Shown in pieces: positions 1 to 58,658 of a stretch of DNA of 63,708 nucleotides. Below the pieces are notes generated by a model. It did not search any database and had not been told where the DNA came from. It worked only from the letters and a program-made list of their open reading frames with translations. Within the stretch, counting starts at the first letter, position 1, and the number at the start of each line of letters is the position of its first letter. This stretch comes from Thecamonas trahens ATCC 50062 (Eukaryota > Protista > Apusomonadida), in NCBI RefSeq assembly GCF_000142905.1, contig NW_013657651.1, positions 248,001 through 311,708 of the forward strand. Direction: 5' to 3'. The position numbers and the translations under genes are program-made.

Positions 1-180
1 GCGGCCAAGAAAAAGCGCAAGCGCGAGGCCAAGAAGCAACGCCAGCGCGAGCGCAAACGCCAGAAAAGGCTCGAGAACATGCAATTCAAGCCGGCAGCGG
101 CTTCTGCTCTGCCCGCCAAGCCTCCTACAGCGATACCAGACGCTGCGCCTACGGCAGCAGACCAAGAACCCGCATCATAG
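1..180 (+). CDS. 3' end of a gene entering the window (basic K/R-rich C-terminal tail)
   Basis: Frame 1 is open from base 1: AAKKKRKREAKKQRQRERKRQKRLENMQFKP...QEPAS, ending at TAG 178-180. Confidence 0.6.
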   Translation, partial: AAKKKRKREAKKQRQRERKRQKRLENMQFKPAAASALPAKPPTAIPDAAPTAADQEPAS

Positions 181-247
181 GTATGACGAGAAGACGTGTG
201 GTGTGTGTTTGTGTGTGTGTACGTTTGATGGGCCGATGTGCACCCGT

Positions 248-949
248 TCAGAGGGTAAAGACGACGGAAAAGCCGGCGCGGAGGTGAGGAAGCGTGGCCA
301 GCAGCTTGCCGTGGTCCCAGGCAAGCGGCGACGGGTCGATTCCCGAGTAGAGATCGTTAATGGCAGTGCGGAAGCGGGCGGCGTGGTCGTCAGAGGCATC
401 GTCGAGAGCAAACGATGACGACGCGAGCGCCTTGTCGACGACAGGCAGGTAGCCGCCAGCGTAGACCTCGACAGCGATGTGGTCGGCAAGGACCCAGCGA
501 TAACCGACGACGGCACCAATGTCGATGTCGAGCCACTGGGCCGAGTGATGGGCGGAGGACGCACCATCGCGGGTAGTCTCCGTCTCGGAGGTGGATGAAG
601 CCTCAAGCGAGAGATATGGCGAGATGTACGGACCCGTGGGAATGCGCGACGACAAGGGCGGATCTGATGCGGCAAGGAAGTGCTTGAAGGCGAGGATGAC
701 AGAGAGACCCATGCGCGAACGTGAGTACACCTTCTGAGTAATGGGCTCGATCCGGGTAAATAGTGTCGAGGGCAGGACGAGGGTGGCCGTCACCGCCGCC
801 GTCGTCGTCCGCTTGGCCAACCATGCGGAGACCACGCCAGGCAGGGCGTCGGCAAGGGCATTCAGCGCACCAGTCGGGCCATCAACAGTCTGCTCATAGC
901 TTCCAGAAATAGTTGCACATGCGAGAGAGAGAGGCGCCAGCGAGTACAT
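248..949 (-). CDS. Putative beta-barrel membrane protein (DUF3575-like pattern); true start uncertain (ATG 949 or further upstream)
   Basis: Amphipathic beta-strand motifs APLSLACATISGSYEQ, GPYISPYL, IGAVVGYRWVLADHIAVEVYAGG, and C-terminal LRAGFSVVFTL. Confidence 0.55.
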   Translation of the reverse strand: MYSLAPLSLACATISGSYEQTVDGPTGALNALADALPGVVSAWLAKRTTTAAVTATLVLPSTLFTRIEPITQKVYSRSRMGLSVILAFKHFLAASDPPLSSRIPTGPYISPYLSLEASSTSETETTRDGASSAHHSAQWLDIDIGAVVGYRWVLADHIAVEVYAGGYLPVVDKALASSSFALDDASDDHAARFRTAINDLYSGIDPSPLAWDHGKLLATLPHLRAGFSVVFTL

Positions 950-19362: not shown

Positions 19363-20512
19363 TTACGGCTTGGCAGCAGCGCCAGCGCCAGCAGCACCGG
19401 CGGCGACCGCAGCGGCAGCGGTGGTGGCAGCGGCGGCTGCAGGCTCCAGAGCGCCGTCCGGAAGCGTCGGCCGCGCAGGCGTGTCGTAGTAAGCACCCAT
19501 AAAGAAGAGGAGCATGAACTGGAGGGCGACGACAAAGATGAGCAGGTAGTTGCGCTTGGAGAGCGAGCGATCGACAGGACCGAAGAACTCCTTGAGGGCG
19601 CGGACGAGAAAGACCGAGGAGAGGATGCCGGCGACGACAATGGCGCCAGTAAATGCCATCGAGCCAAAGTTGATGCCGATCAGCGAGCAGAGGACAATGT
19701 ACACGTACTTGTAACCGCCAAAGGCGACAGCGTCGAGGAACGGCAGCGGACGCGGCGAGTTGGTGAGATAGAAGCCGAGCTTGAGGACAAGGACCTCGAT
19801 GCTGAGCGCAACCAGCGCCGATGTCAAGGTGGCCCCGAGTACCTCGGGCGTGAACCGCTGCTGCACGCCCTGGACGTAAGCGCAGAGGAGGACGTATGTG
19901 ACGAGCGCCATGGACGGAATGTAAAGATCCGGCGCATTGATGTCATCCCGCGGCGGAAGGCGGCGCGGCGTGCCCTCCATGCTCACGCTGGCGTTTCTCG
20001 GCGTCCACTCCTTGAAGGCAAACGGCAGCAGCAGCCGCTTGAACTTGTTCAGCACGTACGAGTTGGAGACGGCAAAGTAGAAGCGGAGCGCCGGGAGGTC
20101 GATCCATCGGTCGATCTGGGTGGGGAGAAGGAGATGAGTTCGTGGGGGAAGAGCAGAGCAGAGAGGGGATGGAGGGGATGGAGGGGATGGAGGGGATGAT
20201 CATCATGCGTACCCGCGAGTGCATCCGTGACACTTCACCGGCGAGCATCTTGCCGCCGAGCGCCGCCGCGCCTGCCAGGGCAGGATCAGCGCCCGAGCCC
20301 AGTGCGGAGAAGGCAGCATCAAAGCCGAGGCCCGGAGCGTCGTCAGCGGCATCTTGACCAGCCATACCCATGCCCATACCCATACCCATGCCTGCTCCAG
20401 TCGGCGCCATGCGAGGAGGCCGGGCGCCCCGACTACGTGGCAAACCGATGGGGGTGCCCGGCGGCGCTGTGTCGAGGGCGTCGAACTCGTAGTTGGAGTT
20501 GGGGTCGAGCAT
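19363..20512 (-). CDS. YIF1: YIF1 ER-Golgi trafficking protein
   Basis: Intron 20116-20212 (GTACGC...CCAG, phase 0). Motifs LRFYFAVSNSYVLNK and DINAPDLYIPSMALVTYVLL, followed by about 5 TM segments. Confidence 0.92.
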
Positions 20513-20710
20513 AGGTAAATGTGTGTGTGTGGGGGGGGGGGAGGGTGTGTTTGTGGTGTGTGTTTGAGGGGGGGTGGGGGGGTGGGAGGGGGGTTATGTG
20601 TGAGGTGTGTGAGGTGTGTGCGGTGTTGTGGAAGGTGACATCGGTGGAGGGAGTGACGGTGGTTGGTTGGCCGGCAGCAGAGTGAGAGTGCCGGCGAGGC
20701 GAGCGAGACG

Positions 20711-20776
20711 GGAGCAGCCACAGCAGGGAGCAACCACAGCAGGGAGCAGCCACAGCAGGGAGCAACCACAGCAGGG
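20711..20776. repeat. 16-bp tandem repeat x4 (GGAGCA[G/A]CCACAGCAG)
   Basis: Direct reading; the G and A variants alternate. Confidence 0.8.
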
Positions 20777-20886
20777 CAGGTTGCCAGGGCCATGTTCCCC
20801 CATCCCCATCTCCATCCCCTCCACCCCAAAATCAAGGTCACATCGGGGATGTGTGACCAACAGCCACATGGGATACAATCGTCCAC

Positions 20887-21610
20887 NNNNNNNNNNNNNN
20901 NNNNNNNNNNNNNNNNNNNNNNNNNNNNNNNNNNNNNNNNNNNNNNNNNNNNNNNNNNNNNNNNNNNNNNNNNNNNNNNNNNNNNNNNNNNNNNNNNNNN
21001 NNNNNNNNNNNNNNNNNNNNNNNNNNNNNNNNNNNNNNNNNNNNNNNNNNNNNNNNNNNNNNNNNNNNNNNNNNNNNNNNNNNNNNNNNNNNNNNNNNNN
21101 NNNNNNNNNNNNNNNNNNNNNNNNNNNNNNNNNNNNNNNNNNNNNNNNNNNNNNNNNNNNNNNNNNNNNNNNNNNNNNNNNNNNNNNNNNNNNNNNNNNN
21201 NNNNNNNNNNNNNNNNNNNNNNNNNNNNNNNNNNNNNNNNNNNNNNNNNNNNNNNNNNNNNNNNNNNNNNNNNNNNNNNNNNNNNNNNNNNNNNNNNNNN
21301 NNNNNNNNNNNNNNNNNNNNNNNNNNNNNNNNNNNNNNNNNNNNNNNNNNNNNNNNNNNNNNNNNNNNNNNNNNNNNNNNNNNNNNNNNNNNNNNNNNNN
21401 NNNNNNNNNNNNNNNNNNNNNNNNNNNNNNNNNNNNNNNNNNNNNNNNNNNNNNNNNNNNNNNNNNNNNNNNNNNNNNNNNNNNNNNNNNNNNNNNNNNN
21501 NNNNNNNNNNNNNNNNNNNNNNNNNNNNNNNNNNNNNNNNNNNNNNNNNNNNNNNNNNNNNNNNNNNNNNNNNNNNNNNNNNNNNNNNNNNNNNNNNNNN
21601 NNNNNNNNNN
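20887..21610. other. Assembly gap (N run)
   Basis: Run of n bases. Confidence 1.
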
Positions 21611-21766
21611 CCCCCCCCCCTGCACGCCGTCTTGTGTGGTTTGTTGGCCATTGGCCATTGGCCATGATCCTGGACGCGACGATGCCGGCCATGTGACCAA
21701 GCCCACTTCCCCCCCCATGACGGGCACGACACCGGACTCGGTACACTCGTCTGGTCCATTCCAACT

Positions 21767-22608
21767 ATGGACGCACCTCTGTTTGGTGAGACCAAGTCCA
21801 GCTCCAAGCTGGTGTACTATGGTGTGGGCGGCATTCTGGGCATCTTCTCCACGGTAGGTGGTGTGACAGGGGGCGGGGAGGGGGGGGGGGAGGGGGGGGA
21901 GCATGTGCGACACGGGAGGACAGGGGAGGCAGGGGGAGAGGCAGGTGAGGCAGGGGGAGAGGCAGGGGGAGGCAGGGGGAGAGGCAGGGGGATTCATGGC
22001 AAGGTGGGAGGGACTGGTGTGCGGTGCAGGTGACTGTGATTGCGGCCATTGTGACGGGCGCCAAGGAGGACTTTCGGCACATCTTCTTTGCTATCACGCT
22101 CTGCCTCTACCTGGCGGTCTTTGCCGTCCTTGTCCGGTGGTACATGAAGGGCGATCTGGATCCCAAGTTCAAGAACCTGTTCATTCTCCTTACCATCGCC
22201 TGCCTCTTTGCAGGCGTCACCGCGAACCTGTACATCTGGCGCAAGCTGCCGGACGTCAAGGCTTGTAAGGGCGAGCTGTACTATGTGGAGAGCGAGACCA
22301 AGGGCTACTGCGTCCCGCTCTGCGCCAGCTCGTACCTGCTCAACACCCGCACTATGGCCTGTCAGTTTGTCAACAACTCGCTCTCCACCCACGGCGTCGA
22401 CATGATCGACTCGGGCCTCTCGCCACTGTCGCTGCCGGACGACGGTGACGCGCCGGCCGAGGCCCCGATCGAGCCTGCTCCCGCCGCGCTTGCGCCCGTC
22501 GCGGCAAAGGAGGTCGAGGCCAAGCCTGCGTCGGCGGCCGGCTCGGTCGCCTTTGGCGTGGGGCTCAAGCGCCGCAAGTCCGGCATCAGCTTCCGCAGGC
22601 AGCCGTAG
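21767..22608 (+). CDS. TMEM243: TMEM243 (DUF2678) family small membrane protein with a C-terminal extension
   Basis: MDAPLFGET...; intron 21854-22029 (GTAGGT...GCAG). IFFAITL...WYMKGDLDPKFKNL...ANLYIW matches the TMEM243 signatures PLFGET, WY..GDL.PKF and ANLY. Confidence 0.85.
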
Positions 22609-47700: not shown

Positions 47701-50700
47701 AGCACCCAGGACCCGGCCGAGGACGCTGCCCTCAAACGCCACCTCACCGGCAGCGCCCGGGCAAAGATCGATGATACCGACCTTGGCCCACGAGCTCTGC
47801 TCGCGAGCGAGGACCCGGAAGAACGACCAGACGCACTGCTCAAGCGCGCCTTCGTGGCCGTCAGCAGGCGCGCCCGCCGGCGGTGCAACAGGAGCCGCGT
47901 TGCGGGTCAGGACTGCAACCGTGGCAATAGAGGCCAGTGCCGGCGTCGCCGCCACCGCCTGCACACCCGCAAGCACGTCGAGGAGCCAGGCTGACATGGC
48001 GACACCCGACGACGATGCCTTGGCCGGCGCCGGCGCAAAGATGACCGCCCACTTGCTGGCGTTTGCAGCAGAGCCGGCGGCCGCAGCTGCGTCGAGTGCG
48101 GCGCGGAGCGCGTTGTTGCCGCCCGAGAGTGGAACGGCCGCGCCCGAGCCGGGTGCCATGCTGGCGATGAGGGCCGAGCCGTAGGCGACGTCGTCGCCGA
48201 GGACAATGACAAAGGTGCCCGAGCCGGCAAGGCCCGCGCCGGTGACTGGGCCGATCGGGATGTACTGGGTCTCGTACACGTGGTCGGCGACGTAGGTCGA
48301 GGCCTCGACAAGGCGGGAAGGAGCGGTAGCGTCGCTGCGAGCTGCGCCGGCGCCGGCGGCCGACGGCTTGAGCTTGAACTTTTGGATCTTGCCCGAGGCG
48401 GTCATCGGGAGCTGGTCGGCAAACTCGTACACGACCGGGGCTTTGTAGCGGGCAAGGTTAGCAGCACAGAGTTCGCGGAGCGCGGCCTCGACGGCGACCT
48501 CCTGACCAAGCGCGTCCGGGTTGAGGACGATGATGGCCTTGACAATCTCCTCCATGACAGGGTCGGGCTGGGCGACGACCGCGGCCATGCGGACCTGCGG
48601 GGCGCGGTAGAGGATGTTCTCGACCTCTGCGCAGTACACGTTCTCACCGCCGGTAAGAATCATGTTCTTGGCGCGGTCGACGACTCGCAGGTAGCCGTGG
48701 TCGAGGGCGACGGCAAGGTCGCCAGTCTTGAAGTAGCCGTCCGAGGTAAAGGCCTCGGCGTTGGCGTCGGGCCGGTTCCAGTAGCCAGAGAAGACGGTCG
48801 GGCCGCGAATGTGGACCTCACCGACGGTCTTGCCGTCAGCCGGAACGGGAGCACCGGTCTCGGGATCAACAATGCGGACGTCCATGAGGAGGAACGGGCG
48901 ACCAGAGGTGGTGATGAACTCGGCGGCGCCGTCGCCGAGGGCGGCAACGGCTGGGGTGACGAGCGAGAACGAGATCTTGCCGCAGCACTCGGTCATACCG
49001 TACGAGATGAAAAAGGTGACCTGCTCGCCAAACCGCTCAAAGACGCGGCGAACCATTTCGGACGGGAGCGGCGAGCCGCCGCACGACATCAGCCGCATCG
49101 AGGTGAGGTCCAGCGGCTCGAGCATGGTTGCCGGCAGCGACATCATCATGGTCACCATGGTCGACGCAAAGTTGGTGATGGAAACTCGATGGTCCGAGAC
49201 GATGCCGAGCGCGCCAAGCGGGTCAAAGGTCCGCGAGATGATGTGCGTGCCACCAACCCAAGTGATGACGTAGATGGCAAAGGCATCGACAAGATGGAAC
49301 ATGGGCGCAAAGTGGCCCCATACGTCGCGGCCGGTGATGGAGAACTCGGCGGCAGCGCCGAGTGCATGCATGGTCACAATCTTGTTGGAGAGGACCACGC
49401 CCTTGGGGAAGCCGGTCGTGCCCGAGGTGTAGTACATCTGGTAGCCGTCTGACGGCGAGGCGGGGCCGACCGGGAGCGCGAGCGGCGCAAAGCCTGACAA
49501 GGTTCCGGCCACCATCTGGGTGTAGGTGTACTCGGCGACCGTGAACGGGGCGCCGCGGGTGAGCGGCAGGCTGAGGGCGGCGTCCTCGGCCTCGGACGGC
49601 GAGACCCAGACGATGCCACCAAGCGAGAGCGCTGCCTGGGCGCCGTCCCAGTGGCCGCCGGCGAGGATGTCGGCGACAACCGGAGCGTACTCGCTGTCCA
49701 CCACCAGCCAGTGCGGCGAGGCGTCGCCAAGAATGAAACCGTGCTCAGCGGCGACAAGGCCGGTGTTGAGGTTGAGGACGACCGAGCGGAGGCCAGCCGC
49801 GGCAAAGTGGAGCTCGTAGACAACAGCCGAGTTGCGGCACAGGACGCCGATGCGGACCTGGCGGAGCGCGGTAGCGCCGCCGGACGACGCTGCCGCGAGC
49901 GACGACGCAATGTTGCGGACGCGGTCATAGACCTGGCCGTAGGTGTGCTCGGTGCCACGGGTGACGTCACGGACGCCGACGGTGGACGAGCCGAGCGCGA
50001 CGGCACGCTCGAGCATGTCCCACGGGTCGACACCGGCAGGCATGATGTCCTCGGAAGCCGGAGGCGGGGTCGGGGTCGGTGGCGAGCGGGCCGGCACAGG
50101 AAGACTCGCAGACGCAGGCGCGGGCGTGGGCGAGCCAGACACGGCCTGATCAACCATGGGCGAAAAGGCGGCAGTGCGGGCGCGCGACGAGAGCACGCCA
50201 CGCGAAAAGTGGGTCATGGTCGAGTAGTCGACCTCGACCTCGAGGAGCATCGAGGTGGAGGCCGCGGCGGCCGCGGCGGCAGCAGCGGAGAGGCCGGCGG
50301 TGGTGTCGACGTGGGCATAGCCAAGGCCAAAGGCCTTGGCCAGGGCAGCGAGGTTGTACTTGGGCAGGACAGTGCAGAACGGAGTCCGGCCCACAAACCG
50401 CTGGAGGCCGGACATCATGCCGAGCTCGTGGTCGCGGAGGACAACGACGGTGACCGGAAGCGGAGCGTTGACAAGGGTCGCCATCTCAAGGCCGGTCATG
50501 AGAAAAGCGCCGTCTCCAACCAGCGCAACGGCGTGGGTGTTGGTAGGCGCGGCGCCGGCGCCGAGGGCAGCCGGCACGCAGTAGCCCATGGACGAGTAGT
50601 CTGTGGGCGAGAGGATGCGGGTGGGCGCGTCGAGGACAAGGTGCTCCATGGCGAGCACAGTGCCGTTGCCCGAGTCGGTGACGTAGACGGTGGTCTGAGA

Positions 50701-53329
50701 CGGGAAGGCGGTCTGGAGCGCGGCGAAGAGTGCAGCGGGAGGAAGGGCGGTGACGCCCGACGCCGACGCGGTCCGCTCGCTCATCTCGGGCGCCGAGAGG
50801 GCCGGCCAGAGGGTGGCGCGGGCGGTGGCGAGGCGCGGATGAATCGACGACTGGGCGGTGGCGAGGCAGGCGGCGCGAACGCCGGCGGCAGCACGCGACT
50901 CGAGCTCGGCGACGAGGGCAGCGACGAGGGCCGAGGAGTCGGCCCGGACAGGAACGGCGTCCATGTGGGCACCGGGCACGGCCGGGTTGATGTCCACATG
51001 AAAAGTGACCCGCTTCGGCGCGGTCCGGTAGTGGGCCGAGGCCATTTCGGACATGCGGGCGCCGAGAATGACGACAACATCGACAGGCTCGACAAACTCG
51101 CGGAGGACCGACGGAACCTGGGCGCCAAAGCCCGGCCAAACAAAGCCGGGGCTCGACTCGGGGTACACACCCTTGCCAGAAAAGGTCGAGGTGAAGAGGG
51201 CACCGGTGAGGCGGCCGAGGGCAAGAAGGGCTGCGGGCTCGACGCCCGCAGCGCCGAGACCGACGTGGAAGAGCGGCGGGTAGGCTGAGTTGAGAAGGGC
51301 AGCGGCAATGCCTCGGATCTGGGCAGCGGTAATGGGCGGCGGAGCGAGCTCAAGACCAGCCGGCAGGGCGAGCCCGGCGGCGGCGTCGGGCACGAGCTGC
51401 GCGCCCGAAGCTACCGAGAGCGGGACCGAGACAAAGACCGGACCGGGCGTGCCCGAGACGGCGAGAGCGGCAGCTGAGGCGAGGGTGCGGACAAGGCTGT
51501 GCGGGTGCTCGACGGCAAGCGCGCCCTTGGAGATGGGCGCGGCGACGGCGGCGTACCAGCTGGCAACACGGGCCTCGTGGGGGGCTGGAGCGTCGGCCTC
51601 AAGCGAGACAACCACGAGCGGGGCGTTGTCCATGTGCGCCTCGCCGACGCCGGAGAAGACAGCCGGGAGGACGTCAACGCTCGGCGCGACGAGGGCGACG
51701 CCGACGGCCTGGCACCGCTGCGAGCGAGCATAGCCGTCAAGCATGAAGCCGGCCGACTGGTTGTCGGTGACGGCGCGGACGTCGAGGCCGGCAGCGGTGG
51801 CTGGCGCCTTCCAGCCGAAGCCTGCCCATGCATGGGTGACAAAGGCGAGGGCGGGACCCGGCGAGTCACTCATGGCAGCGAGGGCAGCAAAGAGGGTGTC
51901 AAGCGCCGGGAGGTCAAGAGCAGCCGGGAGCGGAGTGGCGAGAGCCGGCTCGGTCAGCTCGACAATGACGACCGAGCCCGCAGAGGCGGCCAGGGCAGCG
52001 GCGTCGGCGAGCGAAGCACCGACAGCAAAGCGGGCCGAGACGCCTTCGGCAAAGGCGGCCAGGTCGACGGCCGGCGGGGCGGAACCGTTGGCCAGCGGCG
52101 CGGTGCGTGGAAGGACGGCGACGACAAGCGGCGCGTTGGCGGCAGCGGCGGTGACCAGCTCCATGCCAGTGGCGAGCAGGTCGTCACGCGAGGTGACGAC
52201 GCAGGTCGGAGCCTTGGCGGCGGCGTCGGAGCCATAGGCGGCGCGCCAGAGAGCGGCGCCGATGCCGGTGCAGAGCGTGCCGGGGCTCTCGATGACAAGC
52301 GTCGACGTGCCCTCAAGGAGGCACGACTGGACGCCGGCGGAGGCGGTGGCCGGAGTGAGCGACGGAAGGACGATGACGCCAAACGGCGCGAGGTCGGTGG
52401 GCACGGCGGAAGCAAGAGCTTGGAGCTCCGCGGCTGGGCGCGAGGCAAGCACCGGGTATGCCCCGTAGGCAGCAGCAAGGTCTACGGCGGCAGCGGCAAT
52501 GGCGGCGTCGAGGGCAGCGGCGTCGCAGGCATGCATCGAGTTGAGCATGTCCGAGGGGATTTCGACCGCGACCGGGCCCGGGGCGCCGCCGGCAGCCGGC
52601 GACGGGTCCATGGCCAGCTTTGCGGCATGGAGCAAAAGCTTGGGAATGGCCTCACCTGAGGCAGGCGCGAAGACGTCCTTGACCATGGGGCGGAGAAGGG
52701 CCTGGTTGTCGACATCGTGGAGCTGATAGGCGTCCGAAGCAACAGCCGAGTTCGAGGGCGATCGGCGAGCACCTGTGGTGACCACCAGCATGGGCGCTGA
52801 GGCCAGAGCAGCAGCAGCGATACCAGGCAGGGCATGGGTGATGCCCGGACCGCCGATGATGTTGACAACAGGGAGCGCTGGAGCACCGGCAGCCACCGAT
52901 GCGGCCCATGCGCCATTTGCCATGAAACCGGCCGACTCTTCGTTGCCGATGAGGGCGATGGACGGAGAGGCCTCCGTCAGCGACGCCAGAGCCTCATACA
53001 TCTACAGAAACCAGACCATATCATGCAAGTGAGTCTTCCCGAGGTGTAGTGCGTGGTACAGAGTGGTCGGCATCGGTGTGCGGCTTGCTGTAGCCATGGG
53101 AAGGCGGCAGGAAACGAAGCAAAAGGTGCGTAACATCCGCCACAAGCCGTCCAGGCCACCATACCTCCAGTGGCCAGGGGGACAGAGAAGGAGCATGACG
53201 GGAGAGGGAGAATAAACGGCTTCGTACCTTGAGGTTCTGGACACCAGGAATGCCCATGACAAGCGAGGCTCCCGCAGCCTCCATGCCGAGGGCCACCAGG
53301 GCGTCCCCGCGCTTGGTCGACGTGCTCAT
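44800..53329 (-). CDS. KS-less megasynthase (~2,767 aa): tandem ThDP/acetolactate-synthase-like region, adenylation domain, ketoreductase, ACP x3, LpxA-like acyltransferase
   Basis: Exon 1 53228-53329 (…MGIPGVQNLK); intron 53002-53227 (GTACGA...TGTAG, phase 0); then a 2733-codon ORF. Motifs: NEESAGFMA, GSMG-like YSSMGYCVPAALG, GDGAFLMTGLE; YTSGTTGFPKG, YGMTE, TGDL, GKIQK; TGALGGLG, LDD, YAAAN; GVDSL x3; hexapeptide repeats, AHIAHD, VHQF. Confidence 0.92.
45851..46701. repeat. 315-bp tandem repeat (2.7 copies) encoding three ACP domains
   Basis: Blocks starting at 45851, 46166 and 46481 look identical; Ser codons of the DSL motif lie at 45973, 46288 and 46603. Confidence 0.93.
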
Positions 53330-53400: not shown

Positions 53401-54702
53401 CTAGGCAAGCGCAGAGGCTGGGGCGGGATCGTCAAAGAGCGAGTCGGTGCGGTTGGCCGGCGGGGTGACGACAACAAGGAGCGAGTCGGCAGAGATGCCG
53501 GCAAGGCGATCGAGCGAATCGATCGATGTGCCGCCGATGTCGAGGACCGAGAGCGTAGGCCGTGGTGGGACGCGCTCGATGCCGGGACAGCCCGAGACGT
53601 CGAGGACAGAGACATGGAGCGAGGCCAGCCCGGCCGAGGTGATGCTGGTGCAGCACGAGGCATACAGCGCACGAAGCTCCGTGAGTGGCGCGAGGGCGGC
53701 AAGAACCGCATCGTCGGCGGCGGTGTGCGATATGTCGAGTTCGGTGAGCGAGGTCAGCGCGCCGAGCATAGCCAGTGCCGGCGGAGTGAGGCTGGCGCAG
53801 TGCGCGAGTGAGAGCGATGTCAAATGTGAACAGCCAGCGATGACGGCGGCAAGGACGTCGTCGGTGGCACCCAAACACGCGTCGAGGTGCAGCTCGGTGA
53901 GCGCAGGCGCGGCCGAAATGACCGCCACGAGTGCAGCGGACTGCAGGCCAACATCACCCGCGTCAAAGACATCAAGCTGTGGCATCGACAGATGTCCGAG
54001 CAGCGGAGCGCCGGTCAGTTGTGGCGAGACGCAGCCGCGGAGCACCAGATCCTTGACCCCGGCAGCAAGACCGTTGTGTGCAAGGATGACTCCGAGCGCC
54101 GCGTCGGTGAGCAGCTCGGTCTGCGACAGATCCACCGCGGCCCACTCGGACTGGGCGCACGCCAGCAGCTTGGCCACCGCCACAAGCTTGGGCGCATCGT
54201 CAGGATCGTCCTCATCGCCCCAAACCAGCTCTTCCAGCGCCGGGCAGCCGACAACAACACTCGCGATGCCGACCATGGTCACACTGGGACACCCACCGAC
54301 GTTGAGCACCTTGAGCCCCGGTGCGATGACCGGAAGCTTGGCCAGCAGCGCGTCGTCGATAGCACGAACGACCGAGACGTTAAGCTCGACGAGACGAGTA
54401 AGGGCAGCAATGCCAGCCGTCAGTGCGTCGGAGGTGACCCACGACGAGCACCAAGAGAGGGAGAGGGAGTGCAGATCAGGGGCGGCAGTAGCAATGTGCG
54501 GCAGGAGCTCGTCCGCGTCGATGGCCTCTGTCTCGTCGAGCACCAGTCCTCCCAGAGCATCACACGCAGTTATCCATGCCATCAGCTCAGTCGAGGTCAA
54601 ACTCGCCTTGACATCATCTCCCACCACCATGGTCCCGCAGGCAGGAACTTGGCCCACTTGTTCGGCGCACGCCACTTCCACCCGGTGTGCGGCAGTGGAC
54701 AT
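53401..54702 (-). CDS. Leucine-rich repeat protein (RNI/FBXL/AMN1-like)
   Basis: Repeated LxxLxLxxCxxxTD units (LHSLSLSWC, LKVLNVGGC, LTSLSLAHC, LTELDISHT). Confidence 0.85.
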   Translation of the reverse strand: MSTAAHRVEVACAEQVGQVPACGTMVVGDDVKASLTSTELMAWITACDALGGLVLDETEAIDADELLPHIATAAPDLHSLSLSWCSSWVTSDALTAGIAALTRLVELNVSVVRAIDDALLAKLPVIAPGLKVLNVGGCPSVTMVGIASVVVGCPALEELVWGDEDDPDDAPKLVAVAKLLACAQSEWAAVDLSQTELLTDAALGVILAHNGLAAGVKDLVLRGCVSPQLTGAPLLGHLSMPQLDVFDAGDVGLQSAALVAVISAAPALTELHLDACLGATDDVLAAVIAGCSHLTSLSLAHCASLTPPALAMLGALTSLTELDISHTAADDAVLAALAPLTELRALYASCCTSITSAGLASLHVSVLDVSGCPGIERVPPRPTLSVLDIGGTSIDSLDRLAGISADSLLVVVTPPANRTDSLFDDPAPASALA

Positions 54703-54947
54703 GATGCGAGCAGGGGGGGTGGTGGGGATGGGTGTGTGTGGGTGTGTGGGGGGGGAGGAAGGGGGTGGGGGTGGAGAGTGTGGTGAGGTTGATGCAGGTG
54801 AGGGTGAGACAGATGGGGATAGCCGAGGAGATGTGCGAGGTGGGAGGGGACGTTGTGCTATGGGGAGAAACAGGTGGCGCGTGTCAGTGACGATGCATGC
54901 GGGTTGCAAAGAACAAAAAATATTGTGAGTTGGTGGAAGGGGGGGGG

Positions 54948-55461
54948 NNNNNNNNNNNNNNNNNNNNNNNNNNNNNNNNNNNNNNNNNNNNNNNNNNNNN
55001 NNNNNNNNNNNNNNNNNNNNNNNNNNNNNNNNNNNNNNNNNNNNNNNNNNNNNNNNNNNNNNNNNNNNNNNNNNNNNNNNNNNNNNNNNNNNNNNNNNNN
55101 NNNNNNNNNNNNNNNNNNNNNNNNNNNNNNNNNNNNNNNNNNNNNNNNNNNNNNNNNNNNNNNNNNNNNNNNNNNNNNNNNNNNNNNNNNNNNNNNNNNN
55201 NNNNNNNNNNNNNNNNNNNNNNNNNNNNNNNNNNNNNNNNNNNNNNNNNNNNNNNNNNNNNNNNNNNNNNNNNNNNNNNNNNNNNNNNNNNNNNNNNNNN
55301 NNNNNNNNNNNNNNNNNNNNNNNNNNNNNNNNNNNNNNNNNNNNNNNNNNNNNNNNNNNNNNNNNNNNNNNNNNNNNNNNNNNNNNNNNNNNNNNNNNNN
55401 NNNNNNNNNNNNNNNNNNNNNNNNNNNNNNNNNNNNNNNNNNNNNNNNNNNNNNNNNNNNN
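54948..55461. other. Assembly gap (N run)
   Basis: Run of n bases. Confidence 1.
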
Positions 55462-55764
55462 CCACGTATAGATGGAGATGGTTGGTGTGGGAGTTTGATG
55501 GTGTGGGGGGGTGGGGGGGGGGGAGGGGGGGAGGTGAATGTGATGAGTTCAGGCGTCACGGTGTGTGTGGGGTGTGGGTCTCTTTGGTTTGCCGAGTGAT
55601 GACCGAGAGAAAGCCCCCCACATGCCTCTTACACCGCGTTCCCACCAAATTGGCCAAACGTTGCTAGAAACGCAGTTCGTTGCAGACGCGGTGACGGATA
55701 CACTCGACGTTCCGCCGGTACGGCCCTTGCCCTCTCCTCGGCACCTTCACCTGCCTGTGCCTCG

Positions 55765-58658
55765 ATGAATATGTTACACCTCGCAAGAGTATTTGCTCTG
55801 GTATTGGTCTCGGGCATGGTGGCGATGCCGGCATCGGGCGCTAGTCTGCTCACCTCGACAGCCATCTCGGCCAACCGCAACTGGGTGACCTGCCAGAAGA
55901 ACAGTGATGGCAGCATGCAGGCGAAAGCAGGCAGTTTTCAGCTCAGAAACCAGATTTGCGCATCCAATGGCGAGCTGAGTGCCATTCCCAGCTCGACTAC
56001 GGGATTGGTATGGGTGGACGAGACGTCGAGCATCGTGTTCAGCAAGACGGATATCGATACTCCCTTTGACGTCGGCATCAGCTACTACAACATCGATGCC
56101 TCGCTCAAGGCCATCAGCTTCAACACAAACTACTGGAAGACCGACAACTCGCTGGACACAAACACTCCCTTCGGAGGTACTGCCACTGTGGTCGATGTCT
56201 CGGACGCATCGGGCACATTGTCCGGGCCGGCGGTCCAGGCCATGATCCAGGCGGCTAACGACAACGCCGCCATGGCAAGCGGTCGTCTCATGATCCGCTA
56301 CGAGCAGATCGGGTCAAAGTGCTCGGCAGGCAACTGCAAGCTGGACAGTAATCCTACACCTGTGGTGACCATCAACTACTACGAGGTTTGCCCTACCTTT
56401 GCTCTTGCCAACGGTGTCGTCTCCAACTCGCTCATCACATCCGCGCCCTTTGCGCCTGTTGGCGATGCCCTGTCGCTGGCCTGCAACCCAGGCTTTATGC
56501 TGATCAATGCTGGTGCGGGCAACACTGGTGCGTGCCAAGCTGATGGGACATACGTCAATGCGGCGGCCCAGTGCGTGCCGCCTCCACCGCCGCCGCCATC
56601 ACCATCACCACCGCCGCCGTCGCCGCCCCCACCATCACCACCGCCACCACCGTCGCCTCCTCCTCCTCCTCCACCACCGCCGTCACCACCGCCACCCTCA
56701 CCGCCACCGCCACCACCGTCGCCTCCTCCGCCACCACCGCCGCCTTCACCACCACCGCCGCCTTCACCACCACCGCCGCCATCACCGCCGCCGCCGCCAT
56801 CACCGCCGCCGCCGCTCTCGCCGCCGCCACCACCATCGCCGCCACCACCATCACCACCGCCGCCATCACCCGCCGCCGCCGCCCTCATCACCACCACCAT
56901 CACCACCATCGCCGCCACCACCATCGCCGCCACCACCATCACCTCCACCACCACCACCACCGCCGCCACCAGCCATCACCACCACCACCACCACCACCAT
57001 CACCACCACCACCATCACCACCACCATCACCACCACCATCACCACCACCATCACCACCACCACCATCACCACCACCATCACCACCACCATCACCACCACC
57101 ATCACCACCACCATCACCACCACCATCACCGCCGCCTCTGGATCTTCCGTGTGCGGTAGCCGATGCGGACGACTGCGGCGTGTGCTTTGGCAACGGCACC
57201 TCTTGCCGCGGATGCGACGGTGTCATCGGCTCGCCGGCTGTGGTGGACGAGTGCGGCGTTTGCGACGGAACGAACGAGTGCTTGTCGACCTCGACACCGT
57301 TCTCACCGCCGTCGCTCGCTATCGCCGCTGTTGCTGGCATCGGCGCAGGATGCATCCTTCTCACCGCGCTGCTTGCCGCCATCGTTATCCTCGCCTTGCG
57401 TGCCCGCGGCACCAAAGCCGGCGTTGTGCTTGCGGCACCAGGCGCGGCCGACATCCTTGTCGTCGTGCTCACTCTTCCGCACTCGGACGAGCTTCAGGCC
57501 GACCTGCAGCCCTCGGAGTTCTCCGCCATGCTTGACAGCATGGTCGAGTCATGGGAGCAGACGATTACTGTTTTCGGCGGAACCGCCATCAAGCGCGGCG
57601 GCCGGCTCGACATGATCGCCGCTGCCTCGTTTGGCCGGGACGCGAGCCTCGATGCTCTTATGGCCGCGCTAGCGGTCCACGACGCGCTGCTCAATGTAGA
57701 CTGGTCGGCGGCCGTCCTCGATCATCCTCGCGCAGCTCCAGTCCGTCGGCTAGAGCCGAACTTGTCTGGTCATCGCATCCCGGGCACCATCAAGTACCTG
57801 TGGCGCGGGCCGCGCACTGTTATCAGTATTCTGGCCTGCTCGCCCGTTTCCGAGGATGGAACCGATGAGGTCGGCCCCATCTGCCTCGACAAGGCGGTTG
57901 CCGTCAACAGCGTTGGGCAAACTGGCCATGTCATTGTCACCCGTCTCGCGCTCTCGACTCTTCCTGCTGAGCTCCCGAGCGACATCTGTGTCGATTCTGG
58001 TTCTGAGATACCAGTCATGGCCATCGGCGACGAGGCGCTCCGCGTCACCGCTGTCGGCTCGGTCACCACCGCCCGCAAGCTCATGTCACCGCCCTCGCAA
58101 TCGACGTTGTCAGCCTCATCAGAGCTGGACTCGACCACATCCGCCTCGGCCAGCGAGATTGCAAGCAATCCGGAGGAGATTCCGCGATTTGGTGCGTCTT
58201 CGCAGCTCGACTCGGTCGGCTACTCCTCGGCTACTGACTCGTCGGGTATTGTCTCGGGCTCAAGCCCCGGCTCGACCTGCGATGAGCCGGCTCCGTCGGC
58301 GCGGGTCAACAAGCGGAATGCGCGGCTCCGCGGGATTGCAGGCATTGGCTCGATGGGCAACGTCGCTCCGCGCAAGAGCAGGTTAGACCGAGTCCGCGGT
58401 CTTGGCGGTCGTGGTGCCAATGTGTCGATGCCACTCGGCCACGAGCCTGAGCCCACCTCCTCCCCGCCCCTCGATGTCGCCCACGACGACGGCTCGATTC
58501 TCTTCGGTGATCTCTCTCTCGAGCTAGACGAGGTCGAAGCCGCCAGCAGTGTGGCTCCCATCCCCGCCCTCCCCGTCAGCCCTGCTCGCCGCGCCGAGGC
58601 CCGTCTTCCATCGCAGATCTCGATCGAGCGTCTGCAAGCCGATCTTGGCCACGAGTAG
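55765..58658 (+). CDS. Type I membrane protein: signal peptide, sushi-like domain, SPPP extensin-like stalk, CGVC repeats, TM, degenerate class III nucleotide cyclase domain
   Basis: MNMLHLARVFALVLVSG; CPT...NG...LACNPGFML...CQADGTY...C; (SPPPP)n with two frame breaks near 56870 and 56970; DDCGVC..DECGVC; TM IAAVAGIGAGCILLTALLAAIVILAL; DALMAALAVHDALLNVDW...YLWRGPR. Confidence 0.7.
56578..57136 (+). repeat. Low-complexity (CCA/CCG)n-TCA repeat encoding Ser-Pro3-6
   Basis: Direct reading of the sequence. Confidence 0.9.

What the first reader, a model, noticed from the sequence alone, without database searches (positions are those of the whole stretch)
50180..53329. ThDP region is a single-chain pseudo-dimer with complementary loss of half-sites
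Seen: two tandem ALS-like units. Unit 1 keeps the cofactor-activating Glu (IGNEESAGFMANG, E at 52939-52941; family consensus RHEQ.A.FMADG) but its diphosphate-binding motif is eroded (SRDDLLATGMELVTA..NAPLVVAVL, ~52100-52195) and it has little middle domain. Unit 2 has Asn at that Glu position (VTDNQSAGFMLDGYAR, 51760-51762) but keeps the middle domain and an intact GDGAFLMTGLEMAT...LRD motif (~50430-50517). Established: in this family the active site forms between the PYR domain of one subunit and the PP domain of its partner, and LpxA folds are obligate homotrimers. Inference: the duplication builds one active site within a single chain (PYR1 + PP2). This removes the need to dimerise and so resolves the 2-fold versus 3-fold symmetry clash with the LpxA domain.
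Basis: partly seen in the sequence, partly recalled or inferred. Interest (0 to 1): 0.82.

Follow-up and report, generated by a model that had tools for sequence, protein, structure and literature searches.

The report
Single-chain, one-site thiamine enzyme pseudo-dimer
The front end of this eukaryotic megasynthase holds two fused thiamine-enzyme units, each keeping only the half of the active site that the other has lost, so one chain probably builds one working site; the same design recurs in relatives from other eukaryotes and from myxobacteria.

Summary
The gene is spliced: exon 1 is 53329-53228, a GT-AG intron is 53227-53002, and exon 2 is 53001-44800. Its first ~975 residues read PYR1, linker, truncated PP1, PYR2, middle domain, PP2.

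About 14 relatives share this layout: uncultured eukaryotes, TARA Oceans metagenome scaffolds and Corallococcus. Across them:
- PYR1 always keeps the activating Glu, and nearly always the GPG and FQ active-site loops.
- PYR2 never keeps either loop, and has N, D, G, A or sometimes E at the Glu position.
- PP2 keeps GDG...D.
- PP1 never does.

PP1 is a true PP domain (hhalign 98.5%, E 1.5e-15 against PP2).

An AlphaFold2 model of exon-2 residues 1-940 has pTM 0.83. Unit 2 superposes on a whole AHAS chain (Z 39.6). PP1 plus PYR2 superpose as one rigid body on DXS, the family whose PP and PYR domains form the active site within one chain.

I conclude it is a single-chain pseudo-dimer with one live site (PYR1:PP2) and one dead site. 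The PYR1:PP2 contact itself could not be measured.

The tandem is always followed by an adenylation domain, but most relatives have no LpxA domain.

This is a new variant of a known enzyme kind. I found no published description.

The parts
53228..53329 (-). Exon 1: 34 codons that encode the start of PYR1 and end in GIPGVQNLK.
   Evidence: The junction matches the family consensus GIPGVQNL.xYE.
53002..53227 (-). Intron, 226 nt, GTACGA...TTTCTGTAG, phase 0, GC 0.57.
   Evidence: The environmental orthologue L001 has an AG acceptor at the same place, directly before ATG TAT GAG.
52507..53001 (-). PYR1 (exon-2 aa 1-165). This is the live pyrimidine-binding half. It carries the activating Glu E21 (52941-52939), GGPGITHALPGI (52854-52819) and the YQLHDVDN loop.
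   Evidence: Pfam TPP_enzyme_N; alignment to AHAS and BbmA; HMM of single-unit relatives, 99 bits; family conservation.
52309..52506 (-). Ala-rich linker (aa 166-231) in place of a middle domain. It has low model confidence.
   Evidence: No TPP_enzyme_M hit here; pLDDT below 50 over 177-240; coding-type GC3.
51946..52308 (-). PP1 (aa 232-352). This is a truncated, dead diphosphate-binding domain. S-R-D replaces G-D-G (52191-52183), and P-R follows the beta-strand where the metal-ligand N/D should be.
   Evidence: hhalign PP1 against PP2 98.5%, E 1.5e-15. The HMM of single-unit relatives hits this domain at the GDG region in all members, E down to 1e-14. phmmer with the window's PP2 finds PP1 of P0006, P0007 and P0008. 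Motif table.
51790..51945 (-). Inter-unit linker (aa 353-404).
   Evidence: pLDDT below 50 over 352-367 and 378-405.
51322..51789 (-). PYR2 (aa 405-560). The fold is kept but the cofactor side is lost. Asn N414 (51762-51760) replaces the Glu, the GPG loop reads S-V-D, and the FQ loop is absent. R, E and D of the GyaR / GEA..D helices are kept.
50767..51321 (-). Middle (TH3) domain of unit 2 (aa 561-745).
   Evidence: Pfam TPP_enzyme_M 566-696, 54.6 bits against a cut-off of 30.4.
50197..50766 (-). PP2 (aa 746-935). This is the live diphosphate-binding half. It carries TDSGNGT, SSMGY..PAALGA, and GDG (50517-50509) ... LRD (50439-50431).
   Evidence: Pfam TPP_enzyme_C 776-922, 85.8 bits; 19 of 20 conserved PP columns kept; structural superposition.

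Best explanation
The N-terminal ~975 residues form a single-chain pseudo-dimer of the ThDP decarboxylase/AHAS fold. The domain order is PYR1, linker, PP1, linker, PYR2, TH3, PP2.

The four ThDP-fold domains pack as the PYR/PP core of an ordinary homodimer does. Unit 1 (PYR1 + PP1) stands in for the partner subunit of unit 2. This gives two interfaces of the active-site type.

Only PYR1:PP2 is complete. ThDP-Mg would be anchored by G829-D830-G831 and D857 of PP2. E21 of PYR1 would activate the cofactor's aminopyrimidine ring, and the GPG and FQLHD loops of PYR1 would line the site. All residue numbers are exon-2 numbers; add 34 for the spliced protein.

The other interface, PYR2:PP1, has lost the metal/diphosphate motif, the Glu and both PYR loops. 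It most likely serves only as scaffold.

What is shown:
- the domain order and the homology of all four domains;
- the complementary, family-wide residue pattern;
- a confident overall model;
- unit 2 arranged like an AHAS monomer;
- PP1:PYR2 in catalytic-pair geometry.

What is inferred:
- that PYR1 sits on PP2;
- that exactly one ThDP binds per chain;
- that the site is catalytically active and feeds the adjacent adenylation-KR-ACP line.

Origin: PYR1 and TH3-PP2 are the parts closest to single-unit enzymes of Holophagaceae and Gemmatimonadota. So the tandem looks like such an enzyme with PP1-PYR2 added between PYR and TH3. Equivalently, it is a duplication in which the inner copies decayed.
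For: Architecture. An HMM built from 118 single-unit relatives maps every tandem member as PYR, a short PP piece around the GDG region, then a full PYR-TH3-PP. hhalign gives PP1 against PP2 98.5%, and 2-3% against the other domains.

Complementarity across 15 sequences:
- Column 49, the Glu, is E in 12/12 PYR1 domains. In PYR2 it is N x1, D x6, G x1, A x1 and E x3.
- GPG is kept in 10/12 PYR1 (SPG in the other two) and in 0 of 13 PYR2.
- The (A/Y/F)-(F/Y)-Q-L-H-D-V-D-N loop is kept in PYR1 and gapped or random in PYR2.
- GDG is kept in 13/15 PP2 and the Asp at column 472 in 15/15. No aligned PP1 has GDG.

Structure:
- AlphaFold2 of aa 1-940 with a 15-sequence tandem-only alignment gives pTM 0.83 and pLDDT 74. 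Two independently placed bodies of roughly 540 and 300 residues could not reach that pTM.
- Unit 1 folded alone drops to pTM 0.48, and PP1 confidence falls.
- Residues 362-940 superpose on whole AHAS chains: 1ybh, Z 39.6, rmsd 2.8 A over 525 residues.
- Residues 188-549 (PP1 + PYR2) superpose as one body on E. coli DXS 2o1s_A (Z 10.7, rmsd 3.4 A, 282 residues). They also superpose on a DXPS-like enzyme, 9kpq_B (Z 11.5, rmsd 4.0 A, 295 residues).
- DXS is the family in which PP (domain I) and PYR (domain II) of the same monomer form the active site (PMC5851014).
- Transketolase-type chains, whose intrachain pair is not catalytic, align instead to 356/366..925.

Selection: the catalytic residues are conserved from a free-living eukaryote to myxobacteria at only 33-42% identity overall.
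Against: The PYR1:PP2 contact is therefore deduced from symmetry, not seen.

One row could have shown it: PFOR 6cin_A, model range 19..929. It has rmsd 16.4 A, which is not a rigid-body match and cannot be read either way.

The folded sequence lacks the 34 exon-1 residues.

Unit 1 alone matches decarboxylase-family chains across both its domains only loosely (Z 17, rmsd 6.5-8 A).

Three relatives keep the Glu in PYR2. Glyoxylate carboligase is active with Val at that position (PMC3534367). So the Glu alone does not decide; the case for a dead site rests mainly on PP1.

P0034 and P0049 have also lost GDG in PP2.

Nothing here shows enzymatic activity.
Confidence: 0.7

Rival explanations
1. The domains swap between chains. 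The tandem chains still dimerise (or form higher oligomers), and PYR1 of one chain completes PP2 of another. The live site would then be intermolecular, as in ordinary AHAS.
For: All solved decarboxylase-family enzymes are dimers or tetramers with intersubunit sites (PMC5851014). Several relatives continue into ketosynthase modules, which are dimeric. The 50-65-residue linkers would allow swapping.
Against: The monomer model is confident as a closed assembly (pTM 0.83). PP1 already occupies the partner position on PYR2 within the chain (DXS superposition). PP1 gains confidence only when unit 2 is present.
Confidence: 0.12
2. The whole ThDP region is a pseudo-enzyme. It would be a structural or docking module that no longer binds ThDP or catalyses a reaction.
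For: No curated AHAS or related model reaches its cut-off (TIGR00118 191 bits against 538). Half of the domains are plainly degenerate. Two relatives (P0034, P0049) have lost GDG in PP2 as well.
Against: In nearly all members the full catalytic set is kept at only 33-42% overall identity. That set is Glu, the GPG loop, the FQ loop, TDSGNGT, the MG..PAA.GA helix, GDG and the second metal ligand Asp. This conservation is hard to explain without function.
Confidence: 0.1
3. Both interfaces are functional. The PYR2:PP1 site would bind ThDP or another ligand in a non-canonical way.
For: Glyoxylate carboligase works without the Glu. Three relatives keep Glu in PYR2. PYR2 is otherwise well conserved, with an invariant SGVGEA..D.
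Against: PP1 lacks both metal ligands in every member. In the window it also lacks the N-terminal third of the PP fold: hhalign covers only PP2 columns 57-179. The GPG and FQ loops of PYR2 are gone in all members.
Confidence: 0.06
4. The tandem is an assembly or gene-model artefact: a collapsed or duplicated region, or two genes read as one.
For: The scaffold has N-gaps nearby (54948-55461). The same gene also holds three identical ACP repeats.
Against: The two units are highly diverged from each other and are not copies. The 2733-codon frame is continuous with coding-type GC3. The same order recurs on independent contigs from other organisms.
Confidence: 0.02

Closest known systems
Acetohydroxyacid/acetolactate synthase catalytic subunit and other ThDP decarboxylase-superfamily enzymes (PYR-TH3-PP homodimers)
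   Same: Unit 2 has the same three domains in the same arrangement: Z 39.6, rmsd 2.8 A over 525 residues to 1ybh. The motifs match: Glu helix, GPG, FQ, and GDG-X-N/D. The closest solved sequences are E. coli AHAS I and the HKA synthase BbmA.
   Different: Those enzymes use two identical chains and two equivalent sites. Here one chain carries two unlike units and only one complete site. No AHAS equivalog model is reached. The single-unit relatives and this family have Asp, not Asn, as the second metal ligand.
[quoted passage not shown]
   Same: PP and PYR domains of one chain pack into an active-site interface (PMC5851014). The model's PP1 + PYR2 superpose on DXS domains I + II.
   Different: DXS belongs to the transketolase-like lineage, has one PP and one PYR per chain, and its intrachain site is live. 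Here the DXS-like pair is the dead one, and the live pair is formed by the outer domains.
Two-domain PYR + PP decarboxylases without a TH3 domain (sulfopyruvate and phosphonopyruvate decarboxylase type, such as RhiEF)
   Same: Unit 1 is also PYR followed by PP with no middle domain.
   Different: In the structure search their chains matched only PP2 (9iz3_B, 9u8q_G). Unit 1's nearest sequence relatives are AHAS-like enzymes that do have a TH3 domain. Unit 1 cannot bind the cofactor's diphosphate.
Tandem-duplicated pseudo-dimers with one degenerate site in other folds (double histone fold; ABC transporters with a degenerate nucleotide site)
   Same: An obligate homodimer is turned into one chain, and redundant halves then decay asymmetrically.
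   Different: The folds and chemistry differ. I found no ThDP example in the paper library.

Membership tests
ThDP decarboxylase superfamily (AHAS-like; Pfam TPP_enzyme_N / _M / _C) | PYR domain with the cofactor-activating Glu (standard position 51). | tested here: met
   E21 of PYR1 aligns with the Glu of 6lpi and BbmA. It is E in 12/12 family PYR1 domains. PYR2 has Asn at this position.
ThDP decarboxylase superfamily (AHAS-like; Pfam TPP_enzyme_N / _M / _C) | PP domain with GDG-X(24-27)-N/D metal and diphosphate motif. | tested here: met
   PP2 has G829-D830-G831 ... D857. TPP_enzyme_C scores 85.8 bits against a cut-off of 21.9. PP1 fails this feature: it has S-R-D and no second ligand.
ThDP decarboxylase superfamily (AHAS-like; Pfam TPP_enzyme_N / _M / _C) | TH3 (middle) domain between PYR and PP. 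| tested here: met
   Present in unit 2 (PF00205, 566-696, 54.6 bits against 30.4). Absent from unit 1.
ThDP decarboxylase superfamily (AHAS-like; Pfam TPP_enzyme_N / _M / _C) | Homodimer with two equivalent active sites formed between subunits. | not testable with these tools
   The sequence allows only one complete site per chain.
Biosynthetic acetolactate synthase large subunit (NCBIfam TIGR00118 equivalog) | Score at or above the curated cut-off. | tested here: not met
   191.4 bits for the whole protein and 151.8 bits for unit 2 alone, against a cut-off of 538.35.
ThDP enzymes with an intrachain active site (DXS type) | PP and PYR of one chain packed in catalytic-pair geometry. | tested here: met
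   On the model only: residues 188-549 against 2o1s_A give Z 10.7, rmsd 3.4 A over 282 residues. This is a resemblance in how it works. It is not sequence membership of the DXS family.
ThDP enzymes with an intrachain active site (DXS type) | The live site (here PYR1:PP2) seen as an intrachain contact. | tested here: inconclusive
   No coordinates or PAE. The PFOR row (19..929) has rmsd 16.4 A.

The most novel reading that the evidence does not exclude
The dead PYR2:PP1 interface is not mere scaffold. It would have been kept as a pocket with a new job, for example docking the phosphopantetheine arm or ACP, or receiving the product of the fused adenylation domain. The tandem would then be a channelling device between ThDP chemistry and the carrier-protein line. 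This would explain why PYR2 keeps an invariant SGVGEA..D and Arg while losing every cofactor-facing residue, and why the tandem is never found apart from the adenylation domain.
Probability: 0.15. Interest if true: 0.8.

Novelty: new variant of a known kind. Interest (0 to 1): 0.62.

Why it matters
ThDP enzymes are textbook obligate dimers. Whether their two active sites must communicate (half-of-the-sites or alternating-sites reactivity, the proposed proton wire) is an old and unsettled question.

This would be a natural, conserved family that has only one cofactor site per pseudo-dimer. If that site is active, a second ThDP is dispensable for catalysis in this fold. The family would also give a ready-made asymmetric system for testing the question, with a bacterial member (Corallococcus) that should be easy to express.

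It also defines a recurrent 'tandem ThDP + adenylation' starter cassette of eukaryotic and myxobacterial megasynthases whose chemistry is unknown. And it adds a domain order (PYR-PP-PYR-TH3-PP) to the known architectures of the superfamily.

Tried and rejected
No verdict.
- Coordinates are not exposed, so I could not measure the distance between E21 and the GDG motif.
- Folding unit 1 alone gave a weak model (pTM 0.48). It helped only by contrast with the full model and as a loose two-domain match.
- The PFOR row of the wide structure search (rmsd 16.4 A) could not be interpreted. The OFOR paper I read does not say whether domains I and VI of one protomer form the site.
- The spliced protein (exon 1 + exon 2) was not assembled, searched or folded, in keeping with the operators' rule. 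Every search used exon 2 by reference, so PYR1 lacks its first 34 residues in the models.
- Literature searches for a ThDP pseudo-dimer or tandem, for ThDP domains in PKS loading modules, and for Thecamonas found nothing relevant. The first search matched 'BBMap' rather than BbmA.
- Gene neighbourhoods of the single-unit relatives (GMC oxidoreductase, sorbosone dehydrogenase) gave no clue to the substrate.
- I rejected a hidden in-frame intron in the Ala-rich linkers, because GC3 stays at 0.73-0.90.
- I rejected LpxA symmetry as the cause of the tandem.
- P0008 (5021 aa) was too long for the contig look-up and for Pfam.

Full report
**Gene model**

The region lies on the minus strand inside one very long reading frame, 53001-44800, of 2733 codons. 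That frame starts in the middle of a PYR domain.

The missing start is 34 codons at 53329-53228. These are followed by a 226-nt intron, GTACGA...TTTCTGTAG (53227-53002, phase 0). The junction reads GIPGVQNLK|MYEAL. The uninterrupted Corallococcus homologue has GIPGVQNLRLYEM at that point. An environmental orthologue has an AG acceptor directly before the same ATG TAT GAG.

So the host is a eukaryote. Its assembly has 28.7 Mb in 131 contigs. Another agent's note names it Thecamonas trahens; I did not verify this.

Every search and fold used exon 2 by reference. Residue numbers below are exon-2 numbers; add 34 for the spliced protein.

**The observation**

- HMMER alignments to E. coli AHAS I put E21 (52941-52939) and N414 (51762-51760) on the catalytic Glu.
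- In the alignment to the solved ThDP enzyme BbmA (PDB 8x3x), the S-R-D of unit 1 falls on the G-D-(A) of its metal motif.
- In unit 2, GDG (829-831) and D857 align with GDG...N-N of AHAS I.

Pfam finds two TPP_enzyme_N stretches, one middle domain (566-696) and one full TPP_enzyme_C (776-922). Downstream it finds AMP-binding, KR, three carrier domains and an LpxA-like hexapeptide domain.

Third-position GC stays at coding levels through the Ala-rich linkers, so no intron is hidden there.

**The segment between PYR1 and PYR2 is a PP domain**

Pfam does not see a domain in this segment. Three results show that it is a decayed PP domain.

- phmmer with the window's own PP2 detects the equivalent segment of three relatives (E 1.6e-7 to 4e-5).
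- A profile built from 118 single-unit relatives hits that segment in every tandem protein, always at the model positions around the GDG motif. E reaches 1e-14 in P0006 and is 0.018 in the window.
- hhalign of the family's PP1 alignment against its PP2 alignment gives 98.5% probability, E 1.5e-15, over 102 columns. Against PYR1, PYR2 or the middle domain it gives 2-3%.

In the window, PP1 covers only about the last two thirds of a PP domain.

The order is therefore PYR1, linker, PP1, linker, PYR2, TH3, PP2.

**A family, not a one-off**

Word-based and exhaustive protein searches found about 14 proteins with the same tandem.

- One is an environmental orthologue with the identical full architecture, including the LpxA-like end (P0003).
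- Others are large proteins that continue into ketosynthase modules (P0006, P0032, P0034, and P0007 on a TARA scaffold whose PYR1 is split into several exons).
- P0008 has 5021 residues.
- A group of Corallococcus proteins also carries the tandem. P0001 lies beside a PUFA-synthase-like cluster.

In the set of bacterial species genomes, only Corallococcus has the tandem. Holophagaceae, Gemmatimonadota and Thermoanaerobaculia hold single-unit relatives at 35-42% identity.

In every full-length member an orthologous adenylation domain follows the tandem directly (E 1e-83 to 1e-134).

**Complementary loss, column by column**

I mapped all four ThDP-fold domains of each protein onto the single-unit profile.

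| Feature | PYR1 or PP2 | PYR2 or PP1 |
|---|---|---|
| Activating Glu | E in 12/12 PYR1 | PYR2: N x1 (window), D x6, G x1, A x1, E x3 |
| GPG loop | kept in 10/12 PYR1 (SPG in the other two) | in no PYR2 |
| Loop equivalent to AHAS 'FQE' | (A/Y/F)(F/Y)QLHDVDN in PYR1, nearly invariant | gapped or random in PYR2 |
| GDG | kept in 13/15 PP2 | in no aligned PP1 |
| Second metal ligand (Asp) | kept in 15/15 PP2 | PP1 never has both ligands |
| Other conserved PP columns | 16-19 of 20 kept in most PP2 | PP1 keeps only the PAA.GA helix and one Glu |

The second metal ligand is Asp in the single-unit relatives as well.

The reverse asymmetry also exists. An Arg and the E and D of the 'G.aEA..D' helix are invariant in PYR2 and lost in PYR1. 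This trio may contact the TH3 domain, which only unit 2 has; that reading is an inference.

One caveat applies. Glyoxylate carboligase is active with Val at the Glu position (PMC3534367). The argument that PYR2:PP1 is dead therefore rests on PP1 and the lost loops, not on the Asn alone.

**Structure**

AlphaFold2 on residues 1-940, with an alignment of tandem proteins only, gave mean pLDDT 74 and pTM 0.83. If unit 1 were placed freely relative to unit 2, pTM could hardly exceed the share of the larger body, about 0.6.

Unit 1 folded alone gave pTM 0.48, and PP1 confidence was lower. That model still aligns to decarboxylase-family chains from their PYR domain through to their PP domain (1..351 onto 4..526, Z 17, about 245 residues, rmsd 6.5-8 A).

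In the full model, residues 362-940 superpose on whole AHAS chains (Z 39.6, rmsd 2.8 A, 525 residues). So PYR2-TH3-PP2 is an ordinary monomer.

The most telling rows come from the search of all PDB representatives.

- E. coli DXS (2o1s_A) aligns to model residues 188-549, that is PP1 plus PYR2, as one rigid body (Z 10.7, rmsd 3.4 A, 282 residues).
- A DXPS-like enzyme (9kpq_B) does the same (Z 11.5, rmsd 4.0 A, 295 residues).
- Transketolase, E1p and phosphoketolase align instead to 356/366..925.

DXS is the family in which PP (domain I) and PYR (domain II) of the same monomer form the active site. In transketolase, E1 and AHAS the site lies between monomers (PMC5851014).

So PP1 sits on PYR2 just as a partner subunit's PP domain would. 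By the two-fold design of the ThDP core, PYR1 should sit on PP2.

I could not see that last contact directly. The one chain with the right domain order, PFOR 6cin_A, aligned over 19..929 at rmsd 16.4 A, which means nothing either way.

**Origin**

In a tree of PYR domains, the PYR1 domains form one clade (support 0.87). That clade is sister to 15 single-unit proteins. The PYR2 domains lie just outside on longer branches.

The same single-unit proteins are the best matches of TH3-PP2. tblastn of bacterial single-unit genes matches query residues 1-939, skipping the middle.

The tandem thus looks like a normal PYR-TH3-PP enzyme with PP1-PYR2 added between PYR and TH3. Equivalently, it is a tandem duplication whose inner copies lost their constraint.

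**The symmetry argument**

The LpxA-like end occurs only in the window, in P0003 and perhaps in P0025. Other members end in ketosynthase modules, which are dimeric. Corallococcus members end in neither.

The tandem is tied to the adenylation domain, not to LpxA. The general idea that a self-contained site spares the domain from dimerising inside a megasynthase remains reasonable. It is an inference.

**Verdict**

The pseudo-dimer reading is well supported by conservation and partly supported by modelling. The LpxA rationale is not supported.

I found no description of such a ThDP architecture in the paper library. I rate it a new variant of a known kind.

Noticed in passing
window 51322-51789 (PYR2) against 52507-53001 (PYR1): There is a reverse asymmetry. 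The Arg of 'GyaR' and the Glu and Asp of 'G.aEA..D' are invariant in PYR2 across the family but lost in every PYR1. They may contact the TH3 domain, which only unit 2 has, or line the dead interface.
   Followed up: partly
L003:1-14021 (Corallococcus sp. bb12-1): The bacterial tandem-ThDP-A-ACP gene lies directly after genes with double ketosynthase and PKS-dehydratase domains and a phosphopantetheinyl transferase. This is a PUFA-synthase-like cluster. Its last ~470 residues have no Pfam match.
   Followed up: no
L002:1544-6783 (TARA scaffold): A marine eukaryotic homologue has PYR1 split over at least three exons. The gene runs on into a type I PKS with KS, AT and KR. The tandem-ThDP + adenylation cassette therefore also serves as a PKS starter module.
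   Followed up: partly
L001:100-125: The environmental orthologue P0003 has an AG acceptor at exactly the same codon as the window's intron. Its contig ends before exon 1. The intron position is conserved between the two organisms.
   Followed up: partly
window 54948-55461: An assembly gap (run of N) flanked by long C and CA-rich tracts. It explains the low-GC value in the composition profile at 54001-56000. The dip at 20001-22000 may be another gap; I did not read it.
   Followed up: no
window 53401-54909, minus strand: A leucine-rich-repeat ORF ends 71 nt upstream of the megasynthase start codon at 53329. The promoter and 5' UTR of the megasynthase must therefore be very short, or must overlap the neighbouring gene.
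   Followed up: no
G000:C83:5434-7005 (L076): The only other hit to the ThDP region in this genome is a 641-codon frame with 29% identity to unit 2. It is probably the ordinary acetohydroxyacid synthase, so the tandem gene is single-copy.
   Followed up: no
model m2c3e3a87eed4 against 6cin_A: The PFOR alignment spans model residues 19..929 but with rmsd 16.4 A, an outlier among rows at 2.5-4.5 A. I could not tell whether this reflects the aligner or a real difference in PYR-PP geometry.
   Followed up: partly
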